DNA from: Oopsacas minuta
Lineage: Eukaryota; Animalia; Porifera
Direction: 5' to 3'
Length of the DNA: 64,000 bases
Assembly: GCA_024704765.1 (NCBI GenBank)
Contig: JAKMXF010000365.1
Coordinates: forward strand, 62,001 to 126,000
Positions 10,762-38,100 of the stretch are shown here, one piece after another (within the stretch, counting starts at the first letter, position 1; every line of letters starts with the position of its first letter). The notes under the pieces were generated by a model. It was not told the DNA's origin. It made no database searches and saw only the letters and a program-made list of their open reading frames with translations. The translations under genes and the position numbers were made by a program.

Positions 10762-11628
<867 letters not shown>

Positions 11629-14222: not shown

Positions 14223-14387
14223 TCACTATGACCTTATATGCACATTATCTCTTATATTATTATTGATATTATTATTGATATTATTATGTCTTAAACATTT
14301 TTACCTTTTGTTATTATATACGGAGATTTGTAAACAATTTATTGAGGTGTTTATTGTTTGTTTGTTGTTGTTTATTAGCTGTTGAGT

Positions 14388-17300
14388 ATGCTACATTTCT
14401 CTTCTATCACTTCTCTATCTAACTTAGTAAGTAATTATATAATATGGACCATGGATATTGAAGGATATTTTCTTCTTAAAAACTCAAAAAATGGTGTTAA
14501 AATGGTCGTTTACACCCCTTGAAGATCCATGTAGGGAGAAGTGACTCCTTATGTACCCATGGTCCATATTTTGATCCCATTTATTGGACAGTTTTATGAT
14601 TTATCATATTTAGGTTCCAACAATATTTGGAGATATATCTGGAAATTTTATGTTCTATAGACACAAGCATGCATTCCGATGGAGACCTTTCGTTGCTAGC
14701 TTTCATAATCACAAACATATACAAACAAATATCCAATACACAGTGAGTAAATTATAATAAACAAACAAACAAATAAACAATATTTCTATAGTTTAACGCT
14801 ATTCTCCGCAATATCGGTCTACCCTTAATATCACAAACTCAACTACAGCTGCTTGCAAGATCTCTATCAACCAATCAATTCTCTCGTATACCTCATACTA
14901 CTACATCTAATGATCTTATTGGTCAATACTTTACTAACAGGAGTATGCATACAGATGAGAAGTTAGTTATTAGAGAGCTGGAAGATAAAGCTAATGATTA
15001 TCCTACGGACCCTCTAGCCCAAGAGGCTTACCTCAAGGTAATAACATAGTATCCGACTAAATAGTGGAAAATTCATATAACACCTAACCGCGTTATTACC
15101 GGTATTACTCCGGTTATTACGGACACAATTTGGCTGTCTGTTGGTGTTCGTATTAACGAAGTTAAACTATGTTTGCTTATAAAATTATGTAATAAGCCTA
15201 TTGTTAAACTCTTTAATTTGATTGGGTATGATTCACGGTTGTATTTATTATTAGAGAGTGCTAGAGGTGGACCCCCATTACGTCATGAGGAGATTTGAGA
15301 CAGGAAGGTTTGCTATCAATAATTCTGTCCGCCGGTTATATCAAGAGGCCTTACTTTTAAGCGGGCAAACTAACAATCTAGCCAATAAGAACACAGTCTC
15401 TCCTGTTAACGTCGTTAAAGGTAATTAGCATAGGAAAATCTTAATCTTTTATGGCGACACTTTCACACCTTTTCTCAGAGATTTGTCTATCTTTCAGTTA
15501 GATATTTGTACGTGTTATAAAATACACCTTTTGACACCTACTTACCAAATTTCAAGTTCATATCTCTTCAATAACTGGACCAATAATCCAATTTTGTCCA
15601 ATAGGTACAACCGATAAACCATTGATAGTAGACATAGCTGAAAAGAAGTACAAATGGTTACGTGACGTCAGCAAGATATTACTGTATCTATTTATAGCGA
15701 CATACATACTACACACTATAGACACCAGTTTTAAAGGAGCGCTTCCTAACATGAAAAAGGCTGGATTCGCTCAAGACACAAATGAGAAAAAATACAAGTT
15801 GGTTTAGTTATCTAACCATGGATGGTGGATTTAGTATATCTGCTTGGATGTTGTTCTCCTCTCTTGGTTGGTTGGAGATTTGTATAGGAGCTAAATACGC
15901 CATCCATGGTTAGATAACTAATAAGCATATAGGAGAGGACATGAGGGCAACCCCCCCTTGGAAATATTTCTCCTTTCCTAAAGTGTAATTCAAACGCGCG
16001 CCAAAAATGATATTCAATAAATTATATTTACAGATTTTCAGATATACAAGGTGCTAAGGAAGCTAAAGAGGAACTAATTGAGGTTGTAGAGTTCCTAAAG
16101 ACCCCAGAGAAATTCCAGAGGCTGGGGGCTAAAATGCCAAAAGGTGTCCTCCTAATTGGACAGCCTGGGACAGGAAAGACCCTCTTGGCTCGGGCGGTAG
16201 CGGGTGAGGCTAACGTCCCTTTCTTCTTCACATCAGGATCAGAGTTTGATGAGATGTATGTTGGAGTAGGAGCAGCTAGATTAAGGAATTTATTCCAGAC
16301 TGCTAAGAATAGCAAGCCTTGTGTGGTTAGTTGTTTATTTGTTTGTATTTACTTCCATAATAATAATACAGTCAACTTCGGTTATACCCAACACAGATAT
16401 ATCAAAGTGTTACATTGTATAAATATTGTCCTAAACAAGGTAACGTATATTCCATCGGTTTTATCGAATAATTATTGTGCTCCCTTAAGCTGCTATAACA
16501 GGAATGAATTGTATTTAGTATCACTAATAAGAGACATCTCATTCGTATTGGGTTAACAGCTAGACAAAACACACACAAACTAGACCTAACACTTACATAC
16601 AAATTATAGAATACTTCTAACTACATAACACTTCACAATAGGCCTTTTAAGTTGAGGGACAGGGAATTTTAAAGATTACCAACTGATAACTGTCGTACCT
16701 CTGTCAGTTTTAAAGTTACATGTTCGTTCTTCGGCTCAGTACATAGCCCTGACAATTCTCTATCCCCTCAGTATTGTTTCCCCATAACCATCCCATTTTG
16801 TTTGATAAAGATGCACACACAGATCAAGAGCAGATTTATACAATTGAAACATATAAATAGCTAAAATCACACTGAAACATAACTCAACTAAGATGTACTA
16901 TATTCCAGCTTGGACGGTTATCCTCTTATTAAGTGGAGTATTCGCATTAGGGAACTTGTTGACATACACCATTGGGGTATCACAGGATCACTTTAGACCC
17001 GTGTTCCCCTTTGTCAGTGACACGGGGGCGTATCCTATAGAGAATGGATTCTTTGTTCTGGTATTCGCTATCACTTCGTTATTTGCATTACTTACAATTT
17101 ATATTCGTTTCAAAGATGTTCATATTCATACTGAAGGTGTCTGCTTTAAAGTATGTAACTACATTTTCCTTGTAATAGGAATTATGGCGATATTCTTCCT
17201 TCTGTCTGTCGCAGCATTCGAATTCGATGATTCAAGTCTGTCGAATCGTCTTCACTTTGCTTCAGCTATTCTAACCATTTTCTTGAATTATGTGTATTCG

Positions 17301-20300
17301 TTCGGACAGGCTTTTATTGGTCTGTTACTCCCCCCTATTCGTGTTTGGTGGAAATGGTTAGTATTCGCTATACAGCTGAGCATAACTATTTTCGGTATTA
17401 TTCTGTTTTTGTACTTTTTCGCAACTGCTTTCCTAGAAGCTAATATTTTCTATCTATCCGTGAAACGTAATGTGTCCTCTCTGGGTACAAATGAGGCCCT
17501 CTTGGCTCTCTATTACGAGGGTCTAGCTATCGATTACTCAAGGGCTGTTGTGGAATGGATGATATTCGTTGAGGTGATTGTATTTTTTTTAACTCTTATT
17601 CCTGATTTCCATCGCATCAGAGTTAATCTACAAATTACTCGTCCTTATGACCAAGGAGGTGTGAATACTATTGACAACGAGATGAAGAAAGTTTGAATTG
17701 TTGTTTGTTATTGTTTACTTCTAATTATCTTTAGTATAAGTTTGTTTGTAAACAAGTATAATCATATTATCTAATCAAATTCAATATCTTTTTGTTTGTT
17801 TGTTTATTAAAGAACTGACAAGAGTTACAGATTTGAAATTTGGTAAAAGTATAGAATATGATATAAATATAAATAATATCAAAGAGAAATGTCGAAAACT
17901 CTCTGAGATAGGTGACAAAATATCTATTCATATGGTTCTGTACCTGGTTAAGTAACCGGATTAATCAGTGGCTCTATTAAACAGAGTCTGCTATATTCTT
18001 AACACCTTCAGAGGTTGTTAATTAAATCAGAATATGTACGTACACATGGCATATATCACAGAAATGAGGTGTGATGTAATTAAAATTAAATAGGCTTCAT
18101 CAGAATAATTATTTATACTATTTTGACTGATACATGTTTACAATCGAATCTGCTTAATCGGGTCGAATGGCCTCAGTTCCTGTAACCATATATGAATAGA
18201 TATTTTGTCACCTATCTCAGAGAGTTTTCGACATTTCTCTTTGATATTATTTATATTTATATCATATTCTATACTTTTACCAAATTTCAAATCTGTAACT
18301 CTTGTCAGTTCTTTAATAAACAAACAAACAAAAAGATATTGAATTTGATTAGATAATATGATTATACTTGTTTACAAACAAACTTATACTAAAGATAATT
18401 AGAAGTAAACAATAACAAACAACAATTCAAACTTTCTTCATCTCGTTGTCAATAGTATTCACACCTCCTTGGTCATAAGGACGAGTAATTTGTAGATTAA
18501 CTCTGATGCGATGGAAATCAGGAATAAGAGTCAAAAAAAATACAATCACCTCAACGAATATCATCCATTGCACAACAGCCCTTGAGTAATCGATAGCTAG
18601 ACCCTCGTAATAGAGAGCCAAGAGGGTCTCATTTGTACCCAGAGAGGACACATTACGTCCCACGGATAGATAGAAAATATTAGCTTCAAAGAAAGAGGCT
18701 GCGAAATAGTAGAAAAACAGAATAATACCGAAAATAGTTATGCTCAGCTGTATAGCGAATACTAACCATTTCCACCAAACACGAATAGGGGGGAGTAACA
18801 GACCAATAAAAGCCTGTCCGAACGAATACACATAATTCAAGAAAATGGTTAGAATAGCTGAAGCAAAGTGAAGACGATTCGACAGACTTGAATCATCGAA
18901 TTCGAATGCTGCGACAGACAGAAGGAAGAATATCGCCATAATTCCTATTACAAGGAAAATGTAGTTACATACTTTAAAGCAGACACCTTCAGTATGAATA
19001 TGAACATCTTTGAAACGAATATAAATTGTAAGTAATGCAAATAACGAAGTGATAGCGAATACCAGAACAAAGAATCCATTCTCTATAGGATACGCCCCCG
19101 TGTCACTGATATAGGGGAACACGGGTCTAAAGTGATCCTGTGATACCCCAATGGTGTATGTCAACAAGTTCCCTAATGCGAATACTCCACTTAATAAGAG
19201 GATAACCGTCCAAGCTGGAATATAGTACATCTTAGTTGAGTTATGTTTGTTAAGAAATTCAAAGTATTTATAGAATATATAAGACTATTTATTGAAGTGT
19301 GAAAGTAACAAAAGGTCTTTAATTAGGTTCCTGGTTTTACAGCTATGGTATTTTGTGTAATATACATAGCTGTTAGTTTCAAATTATGGTTCCAATAGCA
19401 TATAATGTTGAATACTATACTTCATGTGATTATATAGACCCACAGATAAATGGGATATCACATACCTTAGTTACCAGATGCTGACTGAAATATTCATCTT
19501 ATATAACCTATATGAATATCAAATAGATTATAATCCTATATTCACACCTAATTATAAATGGCTTCAGTACACATATCTAGTGTTGAGGACACAAACGATG
19601 AGGCTACCTCTTGTAAGAAACTGGCCAATGACTTAGGGTACTTCACAGACCCATTCCTCAAATATTTCTGTAAAGAGTGTCCCAAGCGGTCCCCAGAAAT
19701 TAACCGTGGTTATTATGCTAGATACATTGGAATGCAGGAATGTGTAGATAAATTTATCGGAAAAACTATTGGTCGATCACCACAGATTGTTAATCTAGGC
19801 GCGGGGTTTGACACATTGTTTTGGCGCCTAGCTAGTTGCTATGACAACGAAGATATGCCTGTGGTATTCGAGGTTGATTTACATACAGTGACGTCACGAA
19901 AATGTTTACATATCAAAACGAAGAAGCATCTAATCTCATTGGTTGAAAAGTTTGGTAAGGCAAGCATTGCAAAAGGAGAATTGCATTCTGACAAATATCA
20001 CCTTATCTCATGTGATATACAAAACACCTCTAAAATGGAACTAAGATTAATTAGTTCCGGTTTAGATAAGGATAAGCCTATTCTCTTCTTATGTGAGTGT
20101 TTGTTAGTGTATATTCCATGCATATTTGTACAGGAATTGGTAACCTGGGTAGCTCATAACTTTCACACTTCCCAATTTGTGTCATATGGTCCCGTCAATT
20201 TATCCGACACCTTCGGGGAGGTTATGGAGAACAATTTGAAGAGATCAAGGTGTGATCTATTGGGAGCAGATTTATGCAAGAGTCTAGACACACAACTTGA

Positions 20301-23300
20301 TCTAATAAAGCCATTCCAGAAGAGAGGTGTCGTTACTATGGACAATGTATACAGGAATGTGCAAGATAAGGAGAGGAGAAGAATTGAGAAGATTGAACTC
20401 ATGGATGAGATAGAACCCTTCTATCAACTCCTGTCACATTATTGTGTCACTATAGGTGTTAATGACACCTCTTCTATAGGATTAAGCACTGTATTATGAT
20501 TATTATTCACACGTTATGATTAATCATATTATAACATGTATCAACAAGGAACCTGGACAATTAGGCAATCAGAACTGTTTATCATATACCATCTTGTTTA
20601 CCCAATAAATACAAACAAACAAATATTGTGCAATAATAATATTCACTAATACAATGAATCATAACCTTTAGTATACGTGTTATAATATTGAACTATCTAA
20701 CAACTTTCCTTCGGGTGTACACACCGTTAATAGTGTCACATCTAGGACAATAGTGCTCCACATCCATCATACCACTTATACACAGAGGTATAAGAGATAG
20801 AGGGAGACACAGGACAGGGAAGAGTAGGAGTACGGACATGATTCCTATCACCAGGGCGATAATCCAGCAGTAGAGATAGTTCTGAGACCCCAACCGTTTA
20901 CGCGTATAAGTTACCTACAAATATCCATACAGTAGACCGGTTAATCGGGTTAGAGGCTAGTTTGACCCGATTAACCGGTGACTCTATAAAGCAGATAGAT
21001 ACATTCTATATAGTCAGTAGCGTAACTAGGGAGAAGGAGCTCTTACCTGGTCTGTTTTACATTTGAAACATCTGATTGTTTGAGGATTAGGTCCTCTTAT
21101 ATCTGGAACTGGAACTTCATCAAAAACTGAAGATCTCACATCTTGTAACTACAAGATATAACCATGGATAACATAATTATCTAGCTGTCCCAAACCTGGG
21201 TCCACAGGATCTCACAATTTGTATTACAGTCTATGGGAAACCCTGCAATAATCTATACTTGCTATCCCTGGTCCATACAATACAATAACTTACATTAACT
21301 TCGGAATCAGCATCCACCAGAGGATCCAAGTCTTGATAGAGCTTATGAGTTGGAGTATTCTCCATCGTAGGTCTCTGCATCATAAGAGGAGGAGAATCTG
21401 GGTTTTGTCCCCCATGAAACAACGCTCCGGGCCCCTGACTCCCTTGGAAGGCCTGCTTGACAGCCGGATGGTGTGCTAGATAGGATGGGACCGGATCGTT
21501 GTACACAGGACTTATTTCATTCTGATCTGAGTACATTTGTAGAATTGTTAAAACTCATTTTAGGGTCTCTGATTTGTATTTATACTTTACCGGAGTGCAT
21601 ACTGATAAACCCTCGAATCTTATTGGTTGAGAACTCACGAATTTCGCGGGAATTTACAATTTTATTAATTTCTTATTTTATGGAATTTATTAAATTCTAT
21701 TTTTAGAAATATTATATTTAATTATACAATTATTGAAGGGTGTAAAATTGGATTTTTTGCTCTCCTGGATGGTGCTTATATATTGTACCCCTATTGGATA
21801 AAACATTAAATATTATTATGACGTATTTGACACCTATAACTAAATGACAATATGAATATTTTCGGGGTAGAACCTAGGAAGGAGTTTAGCATCTAATAAG
21901 TAAACAATAACAATAATAAATAGGTAACAAAAGTTTGTCAACAAAAATCTAAAGTAGAATTCATAAACAATTATATAACAGTCACTATGCCACTCTAGAC
22001 ACACCATTCAGGTGGTTGCAGTTAGGACACACATGAGCTGTGTCCATCAATCCTGGAATACACAAGGCGACAAATGCGAATGGCAGGAAAAAGATTGGGA
22101 ACAGGAATATTCCAGAAAGGATCAAAATAACAACAGCTGTAATGCCACACACTATCCAATTCATTGCTCCTATTCTCTTAGTTGTCCTCGTCACCTATAA
22201 ACATACTTTATATCACATTTTCACACCTAATGGAATAGTAATAATATCAAAAAGAGACCCTACCCCTAGGTGCAAGGATAGTCTCATTGGTCGACACATT
22301 ACATTGAAATAATATGGTACCAAATTGACCCATTCGGGGACCCTCCTCTACTTATAATCGTTACATAACAACCGATATACACAATAGGTATTTACCTGTT
22401 CAGTCCTGCAGTTGACACAATTTATCTTCTGAGGAACAGACCCGAATGAGGACACAACAGTTACTACCTTGACAGGTTGAGATTGAGTAGGTGGGGCTTG
22501 TGGTGTCGTATATTGAGCCTACAGTAATTGAGTTAGCATAACACCTAGATGACACATTTTGTGCCGCTAATAATGTGACATAACTTATTGTATAATGACA
22601 CAAAGTTGTCGCTAAGTGGATACCGGTTATAAGGAATACATATTCTAATAACCGGTTTCCACGGGATGGTACTATCCGGTATCTACTGTAATTACCTGTG
22701 GGTACTGTTGAGGAGGGTACCCCTGCTGGGGAGGTGGGTACGGTTGTTGGTACCCCTGTTGGGGGGCAGGAGGATACCCCTGGGCATACCCCTGAGGAGG
22801 GGGAGCATACCCCTGTGCGGGGGGAGCATACCCCTGTGCAGGGGGATTTGGATACATTGGATTTACTGGGGGAGGTGCTCCCACTTTAGTTGGCTCATAG
22901 GGTGGTGGTGGTCCTTGCATAGCTAATATTAGTAAATACAAATTGATATATATATATATTGTCCGTTAGGTGTGAATATGATTATAGAATGTCGGGACCG
23001 AAACCAGAAGACGCGCCCAATAGTCACAAACCAATTGTCTAGAATATAAATATCAAATATCCACACCTCTATGAGAAAAGGTGACAAAACACCACCCAAT
23101 CAGATTTAAGGGTTACTAATAATTTCCTTATCCAAGGCACTATACATGGTAAATTCCTTCATGACACACTGGTTGTCAAGAAGAAGGTCTATTAGGAGAG
23201 GAGAGGAGAGGAGAGGAGAGGAGGGCATTAAAATCTAGGATTATAGATATTTATACTACTTATTGAATGAGCCTATTAGTATAGTATTACACTCTATGGC

Positions 23301-26300
23301 TATGTTATCACTTTCAAAACCTTTAATGTTTTGCGATGGTAATTAGGATATTGTAGTCCTTCATTAGATACCCTCCCTCCCTAAAGGGTGTAGCCAAATA
23401 CCAACAAGGTAACCATGGAAACTGGGACATAACACGTCACAGAAGCCTGTTAGGGGAGTTTATGAATATATTCTTGTATAGAATGCTATGATTCATGGTA
23501 TGTAGTATGTGATTATATGTTATGTCCCCTGTCCAAAGGTGCATTGGTGCCTGTCTCCATGGGACACATCGCCTTCCTTAGGTGTCATATTACTTAATTA
23601 TAAGCACACTTTATTTAACTCACAAAACAAGATAAATAATAAATAGAAATAATAAGCTAATAAAAATAGAAAAAGCTAACACAATAATGATGTGACCTGT
23701 ATAGCTGTCACGTGTTTGTTGATGTTTACAGCTGTTTGTGCACACCGTTAACATGGTTACAGTTAGGGCAAATATGTTCCACATCCTTCAAACCAGGAAT
23801 ACACAAGGCAATGAATGCGAGGGGGATGAGACAGAATGGGATCAATAACTCAGGTCCCAAAATGCATAACACTAATGCAATTATAGCACAGACAAGCCAA
23901 TTCATCGTTCCTACCTTCCTTCTTATTACTGTTGCCTAGAAACGAGTAAAATATGTAAATACTGATATATTATAAGGTGTGAAATCTGGTGAAGGGGACT
24001 CAATAGAGCAATTGGTCTTGAGCCATTGTTAGCGATATTTAACCATATATCACCCTGTATTACATATCCCTACGGTTACCTTGGTTACGTATTACATATG
24101 TGTTCAGGAACTATTCCTCTAATTGGTTCTTTCCTGGATTTTCACGATTTTCTGTAATTTCCATTTTTAAAGTGTAAATAATTTGAATTTTTATTGTTAA
24201 AAATAAATAACAAATCACTGTCTGTCTATGCTTACATTTTACTAAATTCATTTTTGTGGATTATTGAAACTATTTTATTCTACTAATTATCCATTTTAAC
24301 AAAGAGAGGTGTGAACTGCAGAGCGAAAACATTATAATACTATTAATAGCATTAGTTAACACATATTTACCTGCTCGGTTTTGCAGTTTGTGCAACAAAT
24401 TCGCTGAGAAGTATTTCCAAAGTGGGTAGTAATTACCACGTTAGTCACCGCCGGTTGCTGCTGGACAGGGGCTCCCTAAATAACAAATTATGGTGAACAC
24501 ATATTATTAGCTGATTAAAACCGCCAAAACTTACAGGTTGAGGATACGGTTGGGGTACCTGGGCAGGAGGGTATGGTTGTTGTTGAGGGGCACCAGGGGG
24601 ATAGGGCTGTTGTTGAGGGGCACCAGGGGGATAGGGCTGTTGTTGAGGGACACCAGGGGGATAGGGCTGTTGTTGGGGGGCACCAGAGGGATAGGGCTGT
24701 TGGACAGGTGCCGGTGGGTACTGCTCTGCTGGAGTATATTGTGGTGGATTTTCTCCTTGCATATTTTCTTACCTAAAAACGGATAATTTGTTAACCTAGA
24801 TACATGAAAATATGATAATCGCCTCCGATTAGTAGCGACACCTTCAAGGGCACCAAATGTACCCCTAGCAGACCCCCCTGGGTCCAATGTGTCCCTATTT
24901 AGCGGAGTCAACTGTAAGAAAATAACCTTTTAAGAGGAGTTTTCTTTTCTTGAATGAATATTATATCTAATAATTGTGATATTCCACTATTTAAAGAATA
25001 CAAATGCCTAACATTTATCGTATGCTAATTGGAATTAAGCTACGTATGCTATTTCTAGAGGTGGAATATTGGTCGAATACACTCTATACAGTTATAATTG
25101 ATTACTAGTGTTCACACTGCACTATTTTGGCTACAAGTGCATATTTATTGGATACATATGTGGGGCGAGTGTTAACCATGGAAACTGGGACATAGCTTTT
25201 CTTTCAAAGCCGCAGAATAATTCATTGTATGTAGTATTATGTCCTCTGTCCAAGGGTGTTAGAAATTCATCAATGCCCAACTACAATTCGGGGTAAATGG
25301 CATGTTTTTGTGATAAATTTTTTTGAATAAAGTGATATAAAGGCCTATAAATCCTATTTATCCTATTTATACTTCACGAAACGACTAGAGGGATCTCTCA
25401 ACCAATCAGATATCAGTCTATCTCTTCTTCATTCCATTAAGATAGTTGCAATTAGGACACCTGTGTTCTATATCCTTCAGTGACGTAATACATAAGCAAA
25501 TACATGCGAACGGAAAGAGTATTGGTCCAACTCCTAGTAGGCACATAATTAGGATGGTAACCAAGCATATTAGCCAACTTTTTGATCCAACTTTGTATTT
25601 CAGTCTTGTTATCTAAATACAATCATTTAATTATTGAGGAAATGGGATGAGGTACACACTTCAAATTTGGCATGTAGGTGTGAAGTGGTGTAAATATGGA
25701 CATGTATAAATTTCAAAATTAAATCTTGACATTACTCGGAGAAAAGGTGACAAAATGTACTCGCCCAATCAGATTATAGAGGTTACTACTAATGTTATTA
25801 ATTGATAATACAGTAATTTGATTGGTTACCTGTTCCGTATCGCAATTGATACAAGTGATATGAACTGGAACTGTGTCAAATACTGTCACCTTAGTAACCA
25901 TTTTGACTGGTTGTGTCTGTACCGGCTGTTGCATCTAAACGGATAATTATCTTCTTAACAACCATATTTTACTAAGGAATGCGAATAAAAGCATGTAACA
26001 ACGAATTTACTTGTATCACTACTGGAGGAGGTTGTTGTTGTACATAATATCCAGGCGGTTGTTGTTGTTGTTGCTGTTGTTGTTGTTGTTGTTGTTGCTG
26101 TTGTTGTTGTTGTTGATATTGTGGGATTTGTGACTGATAGTCAGGGGCATATGATGAAGGAGGTGGAGGATCACTAAAATCAGTCATAAAATATCCTAAT
26201 CAGATTACAATGGAATGTGTAAGGTAACACCTATAACTACAAACAGAACTATTAGTATTTATCAGCAAATTTCTTGTTTACCTTGAATGTTTGTCTGTTT

Positions 26301-29300
26301 ATTTTGGTTTCATAAGAAATGTGTACAGTATAACAATACCAACATCATTATTTGTAAACAAGACAATAATTAATCATATGGATTTTGTAAATAGTCATAT
26401 TGTGAGTGAACAATTGTATCAGTCTGTGAAGCCATGTTTTATAGTTCTAGTTTAAATTGGAACTATTGAATATTTATATTTATTGTTTGTTAAAATCGTG
26501 GCTCGAATCACACATATAATTACAAATATTAGAAATTTATGCGCGGAATTTATCTGGCGCTGCTATAATATTATAATTGCAACCAAAAATATTCTTATTA
26601 TAGGCGCTAAATATGCAGAATATGGCGCCAGATTTGTGATTTACGCGCCAATAATATATTGGCGCTCAATCCTTTGTCTTCACCTCCAATTTAATTAAGG
26701 AATTTTATTTTTTGTCATATATATGAAAGACAAAACAACAATCTATTAATAGTAAACTAATACGATTAAATTATCGCCTTTTTCACTCCATTTACAAAGC
26801 CACAATTCGGACACACATGGCGCTTGTCCTTTGTGAAGTCCACAAGTAGAACGCACAACACACATGGCAAACACAACAGGAGTCCAAATATGAGGAAAAC
26901 ATATGCCACAATCGCCACTATAATCCATGAGCCAAGTCCAATTTTCGGGTCTACCCTTGTTAACACTTCTTTCTGGCAGTTGGTACATATGATCCTCTCG
27001 GGGACATCACTCCATTTCTTGGGGCCAGGGAGCGTCTGGACACATACCACTGGGGGTCCTGGCGCTGGGACTGGTGGACTGTCATAAGGAGGCGGAAGCT
27101 CTTTTGTGGTTATCAGGGGTTCAAGTTGGGCTGGAGGGTAAGATTGCATTCCGATAGTTCCTTATGGAACATGTTAGAAATTATAATAATAGAATTGATT
27201 TCTAAAATTGTGGTTGAATAGAAATAACATATTTGATGGTTGCATTTTAGAAATTGTGACCACTTGGGTATCGATCCCTTACCGGCGCCCCTTGTGCCAG
27301 AGCTGCAAATGGGTCACATGAAGTGACCCATGACCCATGTGACCCATCGAAGTAGTGACCCATGACCCATTGACCCATGGGTCATGACCCATTTATTATT
27401 TTCTGACCCATTCTGACCCATTCTGACCCATTATGTATTTCATTATTAGGAACAAGTATAATGTAAGTATTTAGTCTAACACAATAATTAAATTGTTTAT
27501 ATATCCTCCCAACACAACAGAGACAGCTTCGATAGTTTCTGGCAACATTGCATTCCGTTGAGATGTTACGATATGCCGAGCATTAAAGGCACTAAAGTGT
27601 CTCTCGCTTTCGGATGAGGATGCCTGAATTACCAATAGTCTCATGGCAATTATTGATAATAATGGAAACCTAAGTTTATTCTGCTTCCACAGATCAAGGA
27701 GATTAAAACTCTTACTTGTAGTATTCCAAACATTTAGTATAATGACCACCTCTATTAACTCTATTTAGAAGGTTTTCTAATTGACAAATAACTCTTTTAA
27801 GCCGACATTGTATATAAATACAATTTTGATGGGTCATGACCCATTAACGCATGACCCATGACCCACTGACCCATCTGACCCATTGACCCATTTGCAGCTC
27901 TGCCTTGTGCCACTTTGTGCTTAATTAAAACATTTTCAAATGTGGCTGTTTTTATATTACAACCAATCAATCATGCAGATAAACAACGTATAACTAATCT
28001 AAACATGTAAACAAATATGCATCAATGGAATGCCTTCTTGACACCGTTAACGAAGCCACAATTCGGACACACGTGCTGCTTGTCTTTCGTAAAGTCCAGG
28101 AGTAGAGCAATTAAGGCAAACGGGACACAAAAGATGAGGCCAAACGCGAGGAGTATCCATGCCACAATTCCCACTGCCACCCACGAACCTAGTCCCACTT
28201 TACTCTCAATTCTTGTCAGGACTTCTTGCTGGCAGTTGACACATTTTATCCTCTCAGAGATCTCACCCCATCTCTTGGGTCCAGTCTGGACACAGACAGG
28301 GGGTGCATCATATGATGGTGGCGCCTCTTTTGTTGCTATGAGGGGATCCTTTTGGACTGGTGGGTATTCCATTCGGTTAGCTATGTTGCTAGCAAATATT
28401 TACTTAACTATGAATTTAATAGTAGAATTATTATCTACTAGTATGGGTGTATTTTAATATTTCAAGATAATACATATAATTAGACGCGTTGCTATAACAA
28501 CAATACAAGAATGTACCTCTCATTTTTACCGGTTTGTGTTTGCCCCCATGAGGGGTAACTTAAGGACCCCTGATTAGTGGCCATTAAGGCTGAATCGAAC
28601 CCTGTTCCCCAAGTCTCTAACGTTATAACAGTCCAAAATTAGTATGATAAATGCACTTCTTGTAAAATGAACTGAAGAGCGGATATTTTGAAGATTTTCT
28701 GAGAATATTTGATAAATTAGAATAAAATAAATTCCTAATTAGGTTATGAATTAATTTTTACCTAAAACTACTGAATTATTGAATTTTATTCATTTTCGCC
28801 ATTTTTGCCTAATTCATTGAAAGGATTCCTTTTATCTTTTCCCATTCAAATGAAAGAAATCCTACCAATGAAATTCTCACTTATATGATATGAAGTCAAT
28901 TTTTGGCGCGTTTGCCCGCAATTACTTTAGTATAAATTGAGAATTTAATAGAATTCAACCACCAATCAGATTCTGTACTTTTCCATAACAGCATGTCATC
29001 TGTACCAACTATTCAAACACAGGAAACATTCTTGGAAAACAGATTGATACATTCCGATACCGATTTTTGGTTGCTAGGCGACGTAGAAGGGCCAGATGAT
29101 GTATTTGAAGATGACCCCTTCGAAAACGGACGAATATTTTTCAGAGTTGATGTACCTATGAGATTCGATTATTTTGCAAAAGAAAAATCTTTCTGGGAAT
29201 CGAGTCAGAGTTATTTCTGGGATTTTATCGGTTATATTTGGCAGAATAAACTTTCCTCAAAAAACACGTGAAAGATATTTTATTTACTTCTTGTTATACA

Positions 29301-31517
29301 CTTTTCCATCAATTTTGACACATTACATAATTTGCAATTATAACACTTTAAAATAGAAAATAATTACTAGAACTATGTCGTATCTTTATCATATGTTGCT
29401 ATCAGTTTACATACCAAAGATGCACCATGAACGTCATTTTCAATAACTGAAACTAGCTAAAGGATGTTGATAGTTCTTTCAATATAACTGAAACTAGCTA
29501 AAGGATGTTGATAGTTTTTTCAATATAACTGAAACTAGCTAAAGGATGTTGATAGTTCTTTCAATAAGTAATCAAATTGATCATAGTTATCCAGAAGATT
29601 CATTATGGAGGGGGGAATTGTAGTAAAATCATAAATTGAAACAAACCAACTTTCTAAGAATGTTTTTATCATATTACTATATGTGAATAGCTGTTAAGAC
29701 TATACAATTAATATCAGAGGATTCTAATTTTAGATATACGATGATTAGGGAAAACTTTGGTATAAATATTATGAAAATATACTTTTGAGTATCAAATAAT
29801 TATTTCTAACATGAATTCCAGAATCCAATCAACTAAACCTCGGCCACATTCCATGCTGTCATTCTCGTCGCTAAGAGGGATAGATGGACCAGATGACGTA
29901 TTTGAGGATTATATTGAGGACACCCAATCATACTTCAGAGTTGATGTGCCACCTGCAACTGATTATACAAAAAATGACCAATCAATATGGGAAGTTACAA
30001 GCACATATTTTTGTAGTTTTCTAGACTCTCTTTGGTGAACTTCACATTCCTAGTAACAATCCTGTTGTTATGTAATTTTTAATTTTATTCTGATAAATAT
30101 ACATTACAATTGCGTTATATTTTTTATAATATTTTAATTCCCGCTCGCGCCCGAAATATCGATTATTGCTATTGCGCGCCTAAAGTTATCTAATTATCCC
30201 GCCAACAAGATCCAATCAAATTCACGCTTTAGAAGTATGCATTGTCTGGAGTTGCATACAGTCAATTCCTGTTATATCTAAGCTCAAGGGACCGCGATAA
30301 TTACTTGGATATAACCGATGGAATGTATGGACTTTGACGGTTTGGGACCATATTTGTACAATTTCACACTTCGATATATCTGAGTTCTATTAACGTGTGA
30401 TGACTGCATATAATTGTGAGGTATTTATGGCTTTCAAAATGTGACAAAACTCAAGATTTACAAGTACTTAAATCCATAGTACCATAGTTAATTATGCCCA
30501 AAAGTTATCTGTACTCTCCTATGGAAAATTCCGTGTTTATCTATTTATAAGACTATCTTGCAAGCCATTTAATAATAATAACAACAAACATAATGAATAC
30601 CAACAGTCAAGCAACCAATCAATTTCCAGAGTTAATCTTGTGGTGTTTGTATTATCACCTCACTTTTCCAAATTTTCCGCTTAAATAATCCTTGCGGCAT
30701 TTTACAGCTGGGACATCTGTGTTTCACATCTTTCCATCTCTTAACAACCAATGGAATTATAGCTAGCGGTAACAGTAAGATTCCGGCGCCTAAAGTGAGA
30801 AGAGTTAATAGGCCTATAATTATTAAAATTATTACACACGAACTTAGTGAGGCCTTCCCGTTGATATAAATTATTTCTGAGATAACTTCGATTTTACACT
30901 CACGACACCTGAATTTTAGAGGGCTAGGGGTCCAGAAGTCCTTCTCCTCTTCCTCCCAAATGGACCAACGTCCCATAGGGGTTGTACTCATGACCTCATG
31001 TGAGGTGTTAAGCGTCACAGGGCTTATGATAACCATTGTGTCACGGTGTAATTTTGGTATCCGCAAATGTTGAGGACGATTTGGTTTAGAATTCATAATT
31101 TTAAATGTGAAATTATTTATTCTGTATTTATAGAAATTACCCGCCACTTTTATGGGGTTTAACAAACGATCTTTTGACGTTTTTCACACAAATTTGCTGA
31201 TTCTTGTATTTTTATGCCTCGTGAAACCTTTAAAACAGTGTCGAATACTCCGCCATTTCTAATTATGTATTTTACGCGGTGAATCTCCAATAAATGAACA
31301 GTAATTGTGATTGAATTTGTTTGTTAATTAGTTTATACTGCAATTCTAATAATAGTAACATTATTTACAGACTTATTTTTTAGTTGTTTACAGAATATTT
31401 ATGCTATAAATATGACTGATATATTCTTGTAAACATTCAATTTTCATTTTATCTAACTTATTTATCTTATTTAATATAGCCAAAATTATTACATTACTTT
31501 TAAGTCAAATTTCATCC

Positions 31518-31567
<50 letters not shown>

Positions 31568-32110: not shown

Positions 32111-32157
<47 letters not shown>

Positions 32158-35100
32158 AACCATGTGATCACGTGACTATTGGGCTATTGGACCATTGGAC
32201 CATGGGGCAGGGCCCCAAATATTTGAAGACCCAACTTTTCTAACTTTAAGCTAAATAAGAGCAATTTAACATAAAAGTTTAGTGTCAAATCGGATTTGAC
32301 AATTTTAACACCTAATTGTCATATTTCATAAATTAAAATAGATCTGGCGACCATTTGGGTGTTTGTTTTAGTGGCGGGCATCGCAGAGGGCAGAGGGACA
32401 ACTACCTCAGATAATAATGGTTCCTATAACGATAAAACTACACCTTTCAATCAAACTTGAAAGAGAAAATAGAATATTCAAATATTTCTACTTTAAATAT
32501 ATTAACTATATGCCTACTAACAATAGATTTTAAGCGGGAAATATTATGAATAGCATTCCTAATGACTCCTATTGTTGCTATGAATAAAATATTTTTTAAT
32601 ATTCATAACAGATATAGTTCAATCATGTACTTTACAAATCTGTAAATTGCTTATACCCACACCTGTTGCTATGATTTAATTCACAAATCTGTAGTATTAT
32701 TACTTCATCTTATGCAGGTTTACTGATGTGAACTTACAACATTTATGGGGGCAAGGGAGGGAGTCTATCCAATAAACAAGGAAACTGCAGCAGTGTATTG
32801 AAATATGAGATTATTATTAAATTATATTCATTTGAGTAGCCGCGCCAACTGGTGTATATTTAATTAGGAAATATTTGAGTGGTATTTTTAGCGTATGACT
32901 TGCCTGTACCCCCAGAGGGGTCGGATGGATAATGGATAATGGATTTGTATCCATCCTACACTTCTGCCTGTTGTGCCTAATAATCTTATTGGTCCAGGAC
33001 AACCAATGAGATTTGTCGCTACGATTAGGCATATAACTTCTACGTAATACATATACAATATATTTACTAATTTTTATATCATAAATCAGTGCGTATAGAA
33101 AGTGTCAAGTCAAATAAGATATGTTCTAATCACACGAAGCAAGATTCATATCGTAAAATTATTGAATATTCAAATTCGGGTGACACAGCTAAACACAAAC
33201 ACTTTTCCACACCTCACAGTGAAATATATAGTTAATATATTTCCACGTGTTAATTAGATTAGATGATGATGGATATATTTTTAAGCGGGGAATAGATAAT
33301 TAGGCGCTAAATTACTCATAAAGAATTCATAATTTAGCGCGATTAATTATCTATTTCCCCGCTTAAAAATATATCCATCATCATCTAATCTAATTAATAA
33401 TACTTAACACCTAATTTCAAATGCTGGGAGCTAATTAATTATTGATTAGAAATTATCTTAGTTTTTGTTGTAATGAACTTTCGGTTTGAATTACAAATAA
33501 TATTCAACGAATAACAACAGCCACCTCTGCACACCTGTTCTTTTAATGACAATAATCTATTCATTAGTATTGAATAGGAACTAACCATCACAGATAGTAC
33601 CGATTTAATTTATAGTCACAGCTATTGCTAACGTCCATCAGCTAAAAATATATATATAATGCTGGATACTGTATGAATTAAAATAAATTCAGTGAAATGA
33701 AGTCTTTTCAAAATATGTTACCAACACTTTTAGAAGCAAGCGAGCCAGGCCTCGGAGAATTTGATAGGCGAGCTAGCACATCGGCGCCCGAATTGGACAG
33801 ACAGAACTCTCCTGCTTCAAATTATAACCCGCCAAATTATGCGCCACCTGGATTTAGGTCCAATGTCCCTGAAAGGCGACAGAGCTTCGCGGAACCGCCG
33901 GCTTATAAGCCACCTTGTGAAACGCTCCTTCGTAAACGAGCAATGAGTTCGCCTCTTTTCCCTTCCAAATTCAGTCGTGAGGAACCTGACACACACGAAA
34001 CACCTTCCCCCACTATTCTGACACCTCAAGTATTCGGTAAAGAGCCACAAGTTGCATTTTGTGCCACTTGTGAGAGACAACAATTGTCTGTCACTAAAAA
34101 AAAAATAGGCAAAGCTTCAAAATTCACTTTTGGAGTGGTAGCTGCCACTGTCGCTGTCATTTTCGCCCCAGCAACCCCTCTGACATTAGGAATTCTCCTA
34201 AATTCAAATCTGAAAGATACTGTGCACAAATGTCCCAGCTGTAGAGAGCGAATGGGCAAACATAGACAACCAGTTTTCTAAATATAGCACCTATTCCTAA
34301 CTTTTTATTTATGTGAAAATATTTTGATATTTATCAGTCGTCCACAATTAATAAATTTAATTGAATTTACTATTTCTATATTATACTTTCATCTATTTGG
34401 CGCGTAATAAAGGACAATATTTTGGCGCCTATAATTTGTATTAGATAACCCCCCATTTCTAAATTCACGCGCCTAGAATCAAAACACGTAGCTGGCTCAT
34501 TAATGTCAACACCAGGAGGTAGTGACACATGTCCCCAATATGACACTATAAACTGGAACTATACAATTACGTTTCACCTATAGTTCCATATTATTATCTT
34601 TATTAGAACTATCTACACCTGCCATATTCTAAAGTCATTATTCTCCTCACTTCGGTAAAGATATTATAATATAATTAGAATTCCAATCAATTGTTTACAT
34701 AAACCACTTTTGCTTATTTGACTGCCACCAGAGACTATGCTGCCACGTAGAATAGGTGTTAGCTAGTTTCATTATAGCACTTTCATTGATCTAAAATTAG
34801 CATCAAACGATCATTGAACGCACGCTTACGTTTGCGATCTATTTTTGATTATCGAAGGATGATCGGCGATCATTTGATCACATTAGGCACACAGAATTCG
34901 AACATTTGCTAATCTAGTCCCCAAAATGTATGACTGATTTAATGGCTATTATACTGGTAGATTTCTTATCAGTAATGTGTCGACATATACTATGGATAAT
35001 AAGGATATCTACATTCCATAGAATGGTTGCATAGCAACATAAAACTATGCATACTGATATGTTGTTATCTTTCCAAATTTCATTTATTGATTGTAATTAG

Positions 35101-38100
35101 TAAACAAACATTAAACGCTCTAAATACACAAACAAATAATCAAAATTAATCCATTTGTTTCTTAGTTCCATTAATATATCCACAATTTGTACAAATATGA
35201 TTAACATCTTTGAAAGTGTCCATGAAAAGTGCTCCAATCCCACAAGGTACACAAATCCAACAGAAACACAGACACAAACATATAATACAAACAGCAGTCA
35301 TTACCCAATTCAAGTTACCGACCTTCAATTCTGTTTGTGAGATCTAAAAATAGAATAATGATAAACGGATTGTTGGTCACACGGAATGATAAGATACTCT
35401 GCCCCATTGGGAAGTGTCCCTTAACCTCATACGGCCTCAGAAAGGTGTGAAAATATTCATATACGTATATACACACTTACCCCAGCGACTTTACAATTCA
35501 CACAGATAAATTCCTGTGGTAGTTTTCCCCATTCAACATCAGTATTATAATTATAACTCAAACCATTTGATATAATACTACCCCGGGACCTCCCGTTGTT
35601 ACCCAAGGGCTCTTTGGAATGTACCGTATTTGGTTCCATATTTGTTTTTGTTGTTGTTTGTTCAGGTGTTGTTTGTGTAGAATTGTTTTCTGGCATTTTG
35701 TAGAAATCTCAAGCTATATGCAAAACACTCTGCCTATTATAATTAACGTAAAGCTGGCATCTTATTGGTCAATAATCCGCCACGTGTGACCTTTATTGAA
35801 CTCTTTACGCTGATTGGTCATAATATCACGTTATATTTGGTAATGTGTAATTTGAACTAATTATCCATTTATTGTACAATTGGAATTATGTTGATAAAAT
35901 GGCGCTCAATTTATATGTATATGCAGCTGGTATTGCGAACAACCGCGACGATAATTATTTATGAAATGTAGGTGTCAAAATTTATTTATTGTTAAGAATT
36001 CAATTGTATTAAAATCTCATGAAAACTTCTATAAACTTTCCAACCAATGAATTTACAGTTTCAGATAGGCATTATGAACTAATAGAATACCAGACAACTG
36101 AGTAAGCCCTCTAATCTGATAGGTTAAGACATTTGTGAACATACTATAAATACAAATGACGATAATTATCAGCTGTTTTAAAATTAATATGAAAACATTT
36201 CGAGAGACTATATATTTAATCTAACCAATCAGAATCCGTAGTTTAGGCGCCATAATGTGCTCACTATTAAGATTCCTAATTTTGGTAATAAATTCTGTCC
36301 AAAAATTCTTGTAAAATTTAATTAAAAATGGAATTGTCAGGAATGTCCCATTTTCGGATATATTTTAGTGTCATATCCATCGACACAAGTTTCCCACTTT
36401 ATGACAGGTCAGACCGCCACAAAATACGTGTCCCACTATTTGCACCATCAGTTCGGAATTCATAAATCATTTCAATCTAGGTATTTATAGATGAACTTGA
36501 TGCCGTGGGTGGAGCACGGATTGCTACAGATATCCACCCATATGCTCGCATGACACTTAATCAATTGTTAGTAGAGCTAGATGGATACAAGGAAAACGAG
36601 GAAGTTATTGTGATAGGCGCAACTAATTTCCCAGAGTCTTTGGACAAGGCCTTGGTGCGACCAGGGAGATTTGATCTTAAAATTAACGTACCGATGCCAG
36701 ACCTTAAAGCTAGACATGATATCTTAAAGTTATATCTTGACAAGGTGTGTTAACAATCTGTCCCGACACCTTTGTCTATTAAATTTGTTTAATTGGAGGT
36801 ACAATGCATATACCTCCATAGTGCCTCCAATTACTTTTTACTGTACGGGCTATTCATAGGTAAAATGTGATCCAAACTTGGACATAGAACCTCTTGCACG
36901 GAGCACGCTTGGTCTGACGGGGGCGGACCTAGCGAACTTAGTCAATCAGGCTGCTATACAGGGGAGCGTTAGGGGTGCAGAATTTGTTACCCAGGGGGAC
37001 CTAGAGATGGCGGAGGATAAAATTAGGATGGGACCAGAGAGGAGAAGTTTGGAGCTGAGAGAGAAAAACAAGGAGGTGATCGCCTACCACGAGGCTGGAC
37101 ATGCCCTCGTGTCTTTATACACTGAAGGTGAGAATTGGCCCTTTTTTCCTCCCGATGGTTCCTTCATAAGTATTTGAACGCACTGCCATAATTTCCACAT
37201 GACACTAATATGCATGCCACATTAGTTGTTTAGAATTTGAGTCTATACAAGTAATTCATCAAAAGACATTTCTTGCAATATTTAACTATTCTGGGCGCGT
37301 GCCACTTGTGCCACATGTGGTATGGTGTGCAATACCTTTGGCCAGTATCAATGACCTTCTGGGTCAATTACAATATTTCAGGGGTACACTCTTGCACCAT
37401 AATCCTCCCCTAAATCACTTGTCCCAACTCCTCACCACTGTTTACGATCCATTTTCAGGTTCAATGGAGATTCGTAAAGCTACCATTATACCCCGGGGAG
37501 GAGCACTGGGGATGGTCTCCTTCTTCCCAGAACGCGACGAGCTAGGCTACACTAAGAAACAAATGTTGGCACAACTTGATGTCGCTATGGGTGGCAGGGC
37601 AGCTGAACAAATTATATTTGGAGACAAGGAGGTTACGGCTGGGGCTAGTAGTGATATGAAGGGAGCTACTGGATTGGCTATGTCAATGGTTGCTCATTTT
37701 GGAATGAGTGAAAAGGTAATTAATATTTTGTAAACACATAAACAAACAAACAAACTAGTAATATATTTGTAGACCGTAGTTCTCATTATATGACACACTA
37801 ACTAATCTCCCGTTTGGAGTTATAGCTATCCCTTGGGGGTTATATAACATTCCTTGTTGGTATCCCTCTGTTCCTACCGTGTGTAGGAAACTGCCTTCTG
37901 GAGAGAATACCCGAATTGAGTGAGAGTCTTCATCGCTAATAACAAAGTTGTTAAGTGGATCTATACAGAAGAAGATAGGGCCTAACACATCCATTCCTTG
38001 TCCACAGGTAATGAGGGAATGTAGCTTGTCTCCTTCTAGGGTTAGCACGTGCATACAGGGGTTGTTAGATGGACACAGTACGTACACGCGGTCACGTGAC

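What the first reader, a model, noticed from the sequence alone, without database searches (positions are those of the whole stretch)
16326..36480. A 20-kb YME1L1 intron hosting an island of 14 nested genes
In a genome of mostly 50-400 bp introns, the YME1L1 AAA domain is split exactly at KPCV|VFIDELD by a 20,155-bp phase-0 GT-AG intron. The intron contains 2 DRAM/TMEM150 genes, LCMT1, 9 LITAF genes and 2 paralogous microproteins, on both strands. LITAF (ESCRT/NEDD4 adaptors on late endosomes) and DRAM (lysosomal autophagy modulators) both act in endolysosomal membrane quality control. The island may therefore be a co-regulated, expanding membrane-damage or innate-defence module sheltered inside an essential mitochondrial protease gene (inference).
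Basis: partly seen in the sequence, partly recalled or inferred. Interest (0 to 1): 0.82.

Follow-up and report, generated by a model that had tools for sequence, protein, structure and literature searches.

The report
Gene island inside YME1L1 intron
In a glass sponge, the only gene for the mitochondrial protease YME1L1 is interrupted by a real, spliced 20-kb intron holding 14 other genes, a layout that related sponges share; it is a striking example of a gene arrangement already known to be common in glass sponges.

Summary
Exon 6 of a YME1-type AAA protease gene ends at 16325 (…KPCV|gt). Exon 7 starts at 36481 (ag|VFIDELD). An RNA-like run from the same study contains a contig that reads from exon 6 straight into exon 7.

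- **Host gene:** it is single-copy in the 61.46-Mb, 365-contig assembly, which matches Oopsacas minuta. Its other introns are 49-331 nt, plus one of 2,024 nt.
- **Contents:** the 20,155-nt intron holds two DRAM/Frag1 genes (a 99% inverted duplication), the genome's only LCMT1, nine LITAF genes with both zinc knuckles, two small conserved ORFs and a hAT remnant.
- **Relatives:** five related assemblies have the same intron position and phase and largely the same gene order. In one of them the intron measures 25.5-25.7 kb.

Eight of the nine LITAF lineages predate the split from these relatives, so the array is old rather than expanding. DRAM was not found in three relatives' fetched islands. 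LCMT1 has no endolysosomal role. Most nested genes carry their own TATA-like promoter.

Nested genes are published as abundant and conserved in glass sponges. This scan has already confirmed similar arrays on other DNA of this genome. I rate this a new member of a known kind, of modest interest.

The parts
14388..14426 (+). YME1L1 coding exon 1 (ATG at 14388)
   Evidence: An X4 loose end before 14614 maps to 14411-14426, followed by GTAAGT. The block is conserved in L012.
14614..14742 (+). YME1L1 exon 2
   Evidence: The RNA junction 14426|14614 is seen. The donor GTGAGT at 14743 is inferred. The block is conserved in L010 and L012.
14792..15037 (+). YME1L1 exon 3
   Evidence: The RNA junction 15037|15255 is seen. 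The block is conserved.
15255..15420 (+). YME1L1 exon 4
   Evidence: An X4 joint skips 184 nt with GT..AG ends. The sequence was read.
15605..15797 (+). YME1L1 exon 5
   Evidence: An X4 joint and a loose end behind 15797 map to 16034.
16034..16325 (+). YME1L1 exon 6 ('exon A'; Walker A GQPGTGKT; ends ...KPCV)
   Evidence: FtsH_fam positions 161-257. It is unique in the genome; the next best match is 58% identical.
16326..36480 (+). Intron 6: 20,155 nt, GT-AG, phase 0, hosting the island
   Evidence: Searches give the splice sites. Relatives share the position and phase.
16893..17696 (+). DRAM/Frag1 gene a (267 aa, single exon)
   Evidence: Pfam PF10277, E 2.6e-16. The L012 orthologue is 66% identical. 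A TATAAAT lies at -41 and is conserved in L012.
18427..19230 (-). DRAM/Frag1 gene b (267 aa), an inverted copy
   Evidence: Pfam hit. The arms 16875-17933 and 18190-19248 are 99% complementary. In X1 the arm contig has depth 455.8 against 214-290 for the flanking contigs, and a 316-nt unitig bridges the spacer.
19558..20499 (+). LCMT1 (313 aa, single exon)
   Evidence: Pfam LCM, E 3e-20. It is 40-44% identical over its full length to named animal LCMT1. The genome has only one other LCM locus, a 675-aa frame.
20693..21536 (-). LITAF gene 1 (C-terminal exon 20693-20893, knuckle exon about 21044-21094, N-terminal exon to 21536)
   Evidence: Orthologues at 75-87% identity.
21985..22920 (-). LITAF gene 2 (split domain; PPPPY motif in the N-terminal exon)
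   Evidence: Orthologues at 83-86% identity.
23732..24762 (-). LITAF gene 3 (split domain; proline-rich 30-nt repeats in the N-terminal exon)
   Evidence: (family D2). Orthologues at 75-90% identity.
25424..26187 (-). LITAF gene 4 (split domain; polyQ N-terminal exon)
   Evidence: Orthologues at 68-73% identity in L010 and L009; none found in L012.
26766..27149 (-). LITAF gene 5 (127 aa, single exon, PPPY)
   Evidence: Pfam E 6e-16. It is a duplicate of gene 6: 72% nucleotide identity and 68% amino-acid identity.
27471..27749 (-). hAT transposase C-terminal remnant
   Evidence: Pfam Dimer_Tnp_hAT, E 5.5e-16.
28022..28372 (-). LITAF gene 6 (116 aa, single exon, PPSY)
   Evidence: Pfam hit. Orthologues at 78-80% identity in L012, L011 and L018.
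28993..29271 (+). Small ORF 1 (92 aa, no Pfam family)
   Evidence: It is 62% identical in L012 and 59-60% in L014 and L017. The genome has 4 family loci. A TATAAAT lies at -62.
29811..30038 (+). Small ORF 2 (75 aa), a paralogue of ORF 1
   Evidence: It is 49% identical in L012. A TATAAAT lies at -50.
30632..31165 (-). LITAF gene 7 (single exon; likely ATG at 31096)
   Evidence: Pfam hit. Orthologues at 61-69% identity over about 150 aa.
33697..34281 (+). LITAF gene 8 (194 aa, single exon, PPNY and PPAY motifs)
   Evidence: Pfam hit. Orthologues at 56-75% identity in L012, L014, L015 and L018. A TATA-like box is conserved.
35155..35696 (-). LITAF gene 9 (split domain)
   Evidence: Orthologues at 65-84% identity in L014, L015, L017 and L018.
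36481..36744 (+). YME1L1 exon 7 ('exon B'; Walker B VFIDELD and the second region of homology)
   Evidence: FtsH_fam positions 258-345. It is 88-95% identical in relatives.
36860..37127 (+). YME1L1 exon 8 (AAA lid and HEAGHA zinc site)
   Evidence: Pfam AAA_lid_3 and M41. FtsH_fam positions 349-435. The boundaries are inferred.
37459..37715 (+). YME1L1 exon 9 (M41 peptidase core)
   Evidence: The best solved relative is yeast YME1.
37755..38993 (-). 412-aa NHL-repeat ORF nested in the 2,024-nt intron 9
   Evidence: Pfam NHL, E 7.7e-16. It belongs to a single-exon family of more than 100 copies. Intron 9 of L014 and L015 is only about 270-340 nt and lacks it.
39740..39973 (+). YME1L1 exon 10 with the stop codon
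   Evidence: FtsH_fam positions 544-598.

Best explanation
This is a genuine, cis-spliced, 20,155-nt phase-0 intron in the single-copy YME1-type i-AAA protease gene of a glass sponge. The assembly statistics match Oopsacas minuta.

The intron is long because it contains an old block of independent genes:
- LCMT1;
- DRAM, recently duplicated in inverted orientation in this species;
- a nine-member LITAF array;
- two small conserved ORFs.

**How it works.**
- Shown: the mature host RNA joins 16325 to 36481.
- Inferred: RNA polymerase on the host gene reads through the whole block.
- Inferred from TATA-like boxes, several of them conserved in relatives: the nested genes are transcribed from their own promoters.

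The nesting arose in the glass-sponge lineage. It has since been kept by the general stability of gene order in that lineage, with only local turnover: one LITAF duplication, one DRAM duplication, a hAT remnant, and an NHL-family gene added to intron 9. Nothing shows functional coupling between the host and its guests, or among the guests.
For: **The junction and the host gene**
- Splice sites and reading frame fit.
- The two exons abut exactly in homologues.
- An RNA contig bridges the junction. Its 30-nt overhang is unique at 36483.
- Four further host junctions are seen in the same run.
- Exon 6 is unique in the genome, and there are only three M41 loci.
- By arithmetic the ten exons sum to 2,085 nt, or 695 codons, and they tile FtsH_fam from position 161 to 598.

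**Relatives**
- Donor ...TGTGTG|GT is present in L009, L010, L011 and L012.
- Acceptor ag|IFIDELD is present in L014, L015, L017 and L018.
- In ERZ25766962 exon 6 and exon 7 lie 25,736 and 25,510 nt apart on two contigs.
- The order exon 6 > (DRAM) > LCMT1 > LITAF array > small ORFs > LITAF 7, 8, 9 > exon 7 is shared.
- The demosponge Dysidea avara has LCMT1 elsewhere, as a 28-kb gene with introns between an NPC1-type and an ankyrin gene.

**Own promoters**
- TATA[AT]A[AT] lies 36-62 nt upstream of the ATG in 10 of 16 genes tested. These include all five same-strand nested genes.
- The background rate at random window positions is 9% (binomial P about 2e-7).
- The motif is conserved in relatives for DRAM and LITAF 8.

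**Literature**
- Glass sponges have thousands of nested genes, many of them conserved, and extensive microsynteny (PMC10282587).
Against: - The junction rests on one Logan contig from one run. That run's type is not on record, and I inferred that it is RNA from its GT..AG joints and exon-limited depth.
- That run comes from the same sample as the assembly.
- No read data were laid on most nested genes, so their expression was not examined. The DRAM ORFs have contigs in the RNA-like run at 4-7 times the depth of the neighbouring intron contig, but the tool warns that depth is a poor measure.
- The TATA window was chosen after I had seen five examples.
- The relatives are unnamed metagenome-type assemblies. 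I infer that they are glass sponges from 88-100% exon identity and shared gene order.
Confidence: 0.88

Rival explanations
1. One reading: the island is a co-regulated, expanding endolysosomal membrane-quality or innate-defence module (LITAF plus DRAM) that is protected by sitting inside an essential gene.
For: - LITAF genes make up 9 of the 14 guests, and most carry PPxY motifs like LITAF adaptors.
- This locus holds 9 of the 16 LITAF hits in the genome.
- Gene order has been kept in five relatives.
Against: - The array is old. Eight of nine lineages have positional orthologues, and paralogues are only 25-57% alike.
- DRAM was not found in the fetched loci of L009, L010 and L011.
- LCMT1, the constant neighbour, is functionally unrelated.
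- DRAM and LITAF are not linked elsewhere in the genome.
- Microsynteny and nesting are genome-wide features of glass sponges.
- Each gene has its own TATA-like box.
Confidence: 0.08
2. The five same-strand guests (DRAM a, LCMT1, small ORFs 1 and 2, LITAF 8) are made, at least in part, from the host pre-mRNA. This would be operon-like, by spliced-leader trans-splicing and internal polyadenylation. Host and guest expression would then be mechanically coupled.
For: - Leader sequences are reported in A. vastus long reads (PMC10282587).
I did not check that claim here.
- AATAAA/ATTAAA signals follow DRAM a, LCMT1 and LITAF 8 within about 125 nt.
Against: - All five same-strand guests have a TATA-like box 41-62 nt upstream of the ATG, conserved in relatives for two of them.
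- No leader-type loose end at these genes appears among the rows shown, although 258 rows were not shown.
Confidence: 0.1
3. The arrangement is an assembly artefact, or two dead gene halves. On this view the real gene is intact elsewhere or the intron is a scaffolding error.
For: - The public assembly is a hybrid PacBio and Illumina scaffold set.
- It contains a 99% palindrome, which can be an assembly artefact.
Against: - An RNA contig joins the two exons.
- Both exons are unique in the genome.
- Independent assemblies of relatives have the same layout, with 25.5-25.7 kb between the exons.
- DNA-like contigs cross 16325 into the intron (X1 record 2 and X3 record 12).
- In X1 the palindrome arm contig has depth 455.8 against 214-290 for the flanking contigs, and a unitig bridges the spacer.
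Confidence: 0.02

Closest known systems
Nested genes of glass sponges (Francis et al. 2023, Aphrocallistes vastus genome, PMC10282587)
   Same: - Mostly single-exon genes sit inside introns of conserved host genes.
- The arrangement is kept between hexactinellid species.
- Automatic annotation handles it poorly. The O. minuta annotation lists only 83 nested genes, against 2,432 in A. vastus.
   Different: - That paper gives genome-wide counts and a few loci such as glassin. I found no mention in it of LITAF.
- Fourteen genes in one intron, including the genome's only LCMT1, is at the extreme end.
Other nested arrays found by this scan in the same genome (for example about 21 genes in an 18.5-kb spastizin intron, s1-211784)
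   Same: - Same genome and the same kind of giant intron, filled with small, mostly intronless genes.
- Also shared with related assemblies.
   Different: - A different host gene and different guests.
- Here the guests are a mixed set (LCMT1, DRAM, LITAF array, small ORFs), not one family.
Classic multi-gene nesting: human NF1 intron with EVI2A, EVI2B and OMG; Drosophila dunce introns (from my own knowledge, not tested here)
   Same: Several independent genes with their own promoters lie inside one intron of a large host gene, with no functional tie to the host.
   Different: - Those hosts are very long genes in large genomes.
- Here the host is otherwise compact (about 5.4 kb without this intron), in a 61-Mb genome with a mean intron of 341 bp.

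Membership tests
YME1/YME1L1 i-AAA protease (FtsH family, peptidase M41) | One AAA+ module with Walker A, Walker B and the second region of homology | tested here: met
   GQPGTGKT in exon 6. VFIDELD and [19 protein letters not shown] in exon 7. Pfam and PDB AAA matches.
YME1/YME1L1 i-AAA protease (FtsH family, peptidase M41) | C-terminal M41 zinc peptidase domain with an HExxH motif | tested here: met
   HEAGHA in exon 8. PF01434 positions 3-191 are covered by exons 8-10. FtsH_fam is tiled from 161 to 598.
YME1/YME1L1 i-AAA protease (FtsH family, peptidase M41) | Orthology to YME1 rather than to the m-AAA paralogues AFG3L2 and SPG7 | tested here: inconclusive
   For exon 9 the best solved hit is yeast YME1 (E 3.7e-20), against FtsH at 1e-18 and AFG3L2 at 8.8e-13. 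The genome has three M41 loci, the number expected for YME1L1, AFG3L2 and SPG7. No tree was built, because the joined protein was not assembled.
YME1/YME1L1 i-AAA protease (FtsH family, peptidase M41) | Mitochondrial targeting and a single transmembrane segment in the N-terminal region | not tested
   The N-terminal exons 1-5 have no family match. No localisation tool was run.
LCMT1 (PP2A leucine carboxyl methyltransferase) | LCM SAM-methyltransferase domain, and full-length similarity to named LCMT1 rather than to the longer LCMT2/TYW4 | tested here: met
   PF04072, E 3e-20. It is 40-44% identical over 92-99% of its length to many named animal LCMT1 of 305-356 aa. The other LCM locus in the genome is a 675-aa frame.
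LITAF/CDIP1 (zf-LITAF-like) | CxxC ... hydrophobic membrane-inserting stretch ... HxCPxC zinc ribbon | tested here: met
   Nine PF10601 hits over the cut-off. Both knuckles were found for all nine.
LITAF/CDIP1 (zf-LITAF-like) | N-terminal PPxY motifs for NEDD4-type WW domains (typical of LITAF proper) | tested here: met
   PPPY, PPSY, PPQY, PPNY and PPAY motifs in the N-terminal parts of genes 2, 3, 5, 6 and 8 (translations). None is obvious in genes 7 and 9. Binding was not tested.
DRAM/TMEM150 (Frag1/DRAM/Sfk1) | Multi-pass membrane protein matching PF10277 end to end | tested here: met
   PF10277 profile positions 3-219 of 220, E about 1e-16, for both copies. Assignment to DRAM as against TMEM150 was not tested.
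Nested (intronic) gene arrangement | The guest lies wholly inside an intron that the host demonstrably splices out | tested here: met
   The host junction 16325|36481 is seen in an RNA contig. All 14 guests lie between 16893 and 35696.
Nested (intronic) gene arrangement | The guests are expressed as separate transcripts | tested here: inconclusive
   TATA-like boxes are enriched upstream of the guests. The RNA-like run has contigs on the DRAM ORFs. No read data were available for the other guests.

The most novel reading that the evidence does not exclude
Host read-through and guest transcription interfere with each other. On this reading, expression of the mitochondrial protease YME1L1 would be reciprocally coupled to expression of the LITAF/DRAM endolysosomal genes and of LCMT1. 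The long-term retention of this particular set inside this particular intron would then reflect that regulatory coupling and not merely the general stability of gene order.
Probability: 0.06. Interest if true: 0.6.

Novelty: new member of a known kind. Interest (0 to 1): 0.3.

Why it matters
**Annotation.** The published O. minuta annotation mapped its RNA reads with a 5-kb intron limit (PMC10280926) and lists only 83 nested genes (PMC10282587). It therefore probably splits this essential gene in two; I did not check this. The exon model given here repairs it.

**Evolution.** The locus is a clean, datable example of how a compact animal genome tolerates a 20-kb intron full of genes inside a housekeeping gene:
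- the intron's position and phase are kept in five other assemblies;
- eight of nine LITAF lineages are kept one-to-one;
- turnover is limited to a few local duplications and insertions.

**Side result.** The two small ORFs are shown to be conserved genes.

None of this changes what is known about nested genes in general.

Tried and rejected
- **Joined host protein.** Exons were searched one by one, and the length of 695 codons is arithmetic only.
- **Both intron ends in one call.** The junction comes from a loose end on the donor side.
- **Naming the relatives.**
  - A paper search for SRR11455651, SAMN14422900 and BUSC20 found nothing.
  - A BioProject number that I recalled from memory (PRJNA613976) belongs to Vazella pourtalesii metagenomes.
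- **Is the intron position older than glass sponges?** Exon-level ORFs of unknown eukaryotes (P0123, P0136, P0137) read straight through ...PCI[IV]FIDE.... The intron is therefore not universal, but the taxa are unknown, so nothing firm follows.
- **LCMT1 and DRAM as retrogenes.** I considered this because they lack introns while D. avara LCMT1 has them. It is not persuasive, because about 60% of O. minuta transcripts are single-exon anyway.
- **Is the window's NHL ORF the same gene as the 606-690 aa ORF in relatives' islands?** They share only 20-23% identity. They are distant family members, not orthologues.
- **Large representative-protein search and structure tools.** Not used. The families were clear from Pfam, NCBIfam and the word search.

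Full report
**What is there.** On the + strand an open frame ends with ...GQPGTGKT...AKNSKPCV at 16325, followed by GTTAGT. At 36481, directly after ...CAATCTAG, a frame starts with [11 protein letters not shown]....

The two pieces are consecutive parts of one AAA+ module, with no residue missing or repeated:
- In the human YME1L ATPase domain (5ubv), query residues 2-74 of the first piece align to chain residues 28-100, and the second piece starts at residue 102.
- In yeast YME1 (6az0) the figures are 25-97 and 99.
- In the NCBIfam FtsH model the pieces cover profile positions 161-257 and 258-345.

**RNA evidence.** Five public runs hold the stretch around the donor. I laid four of them on 13350-19300.

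Run X4 comes from the same sample as the DNA-like runs. It behaves as RNA:
- It has GT..AG joints that skip 49 and 184 nt.
- Its depth is in the thousands on exons and about 100-160 at the start of the intron.
- Its loose ends map to the next exon: 14426|14614, 15037|15255 and 15797|16034.

X4 also has a 37-nt loose end behind 16327. The 30 nt shown occur once in the window, at 36483-36512, with no mismatch. The 2-nt offset arises because 'GT' is both the start of the intron and the start of exon 7. A transcript contig therefore joins 16325 to 36481.

The O. minuta study deposited RNA-seq, DNA-seq, mate-pair and PacBio data (PMC10280926). This fits X1-X4.

**Host gene.**
- The assembly has 61,460,524 bases in 365 contigs. 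These are the published figures for Oopsacas minuta.
- It holds three M41 peptidase loci.
- Exon 6 occurs once; the next best match is 58% identical. There is no second YME1L1.
- From RNA joints, conservation in relatives and splice consensus, the coding exons are 14388-14426, 14614-14742, 14792-15037, 15255-15420, 15605-15797, 16034-16325, 36481-36744, 36860-37127, 37459-37715 and 39740-39973.
- By arithmetic these sum to 2,085 nt, or 695 codons.
- The other introns are 187, 49, 217, 184, 236, 115, 331 and 2,024 nt. The genome's published mean is 341 bp.
- For exon 9, yeast YME1 is the best solved relative, ahead of FtsH and AFG3L2. YME1-type orthology is likely but not proven.

**Guests in the 20-kb intron.**

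| Guest | Place | Evidence |
|---|---|---|
| Two Frag1/DRAM ORFs, 267 aa each | 16893-17696 (+), 18427-19230 (-) | Pfam |
| LCMT1, 313 aa | 19558-20499 (+) | Pfam LCM |
| Nine LITAF genes | 20693-35696 | 9 of 16 genome-wide domain hits |
| Two small paralogous ORFs | 28993 and 29811 (+) | No Pfam family |
| hAT transposase remnant | 27471-27749 (-) | Pfam |

- **DRAM pair.** The two ORFs lie in 1,059-nt inverted arms that are 99% complementary, 256 nt apart. The duplication is real: in X1 the arm contig has depth 455.8 against 214-290 for the flanking contigs, and one 316-nt unitig runs from one arm through the spacer into the other.
- **LCMT1.** It is 40-44% identical over its full length to named animal LCMT1. 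The only other LCM locus in the genome is a 675-aa frame.
- **LITAF.** A profile built from the four single-exon copies finds the first zinc knuckle of the other five on a small upstream exon. These five are split at the same domain position. All nine therefore look intact. PPxY motifs are present in five of them.
- **Small ORFs.** They belong to a family with four loci in the genome.
- **A fifteenth guest.** A 412-aa NHL-repeat ORF lies backwards in the 2-kb intron 9. It belongs to a single-exon family with more than 100 copies in the genome.

**Relatives.** I used the LCMT1 ORF and the exon 7 ORF as handles and fetched loci from five other assemblies.
- All four loci that hold exon 6 end it with ...TGTGTG|GT.
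- All four loci that hold exon 7 start it with ag|ATnTTCATnGAnGAG, which reads IFIDELD.
- In ERZ25766962 both exons lie on the same contig, 25,736 nt apart. On a second contig of the same assembly they are 25,510 nt apart.
- L012 has this order: exon 6, one DRAM (+), LCMT1 (+), four LITAF (-), small ORF 1 (+), small ORF 2 (+), LITAF 7 (-), LITAF 8 (+), then the end of the contig.
- L014, L017 and L018 show the tail: small ORFs (not matched in L018 at the threshold used), LITAF 7 (-), LITAF 8 (+), LITAF 9 (-), exon 7. L015 shows LITAF 8 (+), LITAF 9 (-), exon 7.
- Positional orthologues of LIT1-4 and LIT7-9 are 55-90% identical. Paralogues inside the window are 25-57% identical. LIT5 and LIT6 (68%) share a single orthologue.
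- The array therefore predates the split of these taxa. Only one LITAF duplication and the DRAM inversion are recent.
- L009, L010 and L011 have a 606-690 aa ORF where this species has DRAM; the L011 copy has a weak NHL match.
- The demosponge Dysidea avara has LCMT1 as a 28-kb gene with introns between an NPC1-type and an ankyrin gene. The nesting is thus not shared with that demosponge.

**How the guests are expressed.** A TATA[AT]A[AT] motif lies 36-62 nt upstream of the start codon in 10 of 16 genes tested. These include all five same-strand guests. The background rate at random window positions is 9%, giving a binomial P of about 2e-7. The window was chosen after I had seen five cases. 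The motif sits at the same offset in relatives for DRAM and LITAF 8. This favours independent promoters over production from the host transcript.

In the RNA-like run the DRAM ORFs carry contigs of depth about 380-710, against 100 for the neighbouring intron contig. The tool warns against reading depth as expression.

**Comparison with what is known.**
- Francis et al. 2023 (PMC10282587) report 2,432 nested genes (12.4% of all genes) in Aphrocallistes vastus, 'many of which are conserved'.
- They report extensive microsynteny between A. vastus and O. minuta.
- They count only 83 nested genes in the O. minuta annotation, for methodological reasons.
- The O. minuta annotation mapped its RNA with a 5-kb maximum intron. 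A 20-kb intron could not have been supported by those alignments.
- This scan has already confirmed similar arrays elsewhere in the genome. One example is about 21 genes in an 18.5-kb spastizin intron.

The reading as a functional module is not supported:
- the array is stable and not expanding;
- DRAM is not a constant member;
- LCMT1 is functionally unrelated;
- DRAM and LITAF are unlinked elsewhere in the genome;
- conservation of gene order is the rule in this group.

This is a large and well-documented new example of a known arrangement. It has practical value for re-annotation.

Noticed in passing
window 37755-38993 (-); also 58112-59353 (+) and 61729-62961 (+): A single-exon gene family encoding about 412 aa with a coiled-coil and NHL repeats has more than 100 copies in the genome (910 first-look candidates), many of them 75-87% identical. 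One copy sits in YME1L1 intron 9, where relatives have only about 300 nt. It looks like a recently spreading family.
   Followed up: partly
window 28993-29271 and 29811-30038 (+); L012:13128-13382 and 14172-14399; L014:162-380 and 1843-2058: The two small ORFs with no Pfam family are conserved in place and orientation in relatives (43-62% identity). They have TATA-like boxes and two further paralogues on contig C335. They are probably real genes of an undescribed small family.
   Followed up: partly
window 15804-15933: A short repeat in YME1L1 intron 5 has very high depth in all runs (4,062 against about 290 in X1) and dozens of divergent loose ends. It is probably a high-copy dispersed element, possibly MITE-like.
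   Followed up: no
window 11883-14222 (+): A conserved multi-exon gene with no Pfam match in its largest exon lies between NACA (10995-11865) and YME1L1. It has an RNA-supported 49-nt intron (13725-13773), and its coding conservation stops just before the stop codon at 14220-14222.
   Followed up: no
run X5 laid on window 13350-16386: A 2024 run from another organism and study holds this locus at 90-95% nucleotide identity, including the first 60 nt of the giant intron. Nothing in it matches the DRAM arms at 90% or more. It may be a close relative that lacks or has diverged in the DRAM pair.
   Followed up: no
L009:3027-9135: In ERZ25072730 the unit made of a 688-aa minus-strand ORF plus LCMT1 is duplicated in tandem, and the first LCMT1 copy is truncated to 130 aa.
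   Followed up: no
L018:7290-7864: The LITAF 8 orthologue in ERZ25072740 aligns as two pieces in different frames that overlap at 7436-7442. This could be a frameshift or a small intron.
   Followed up: no
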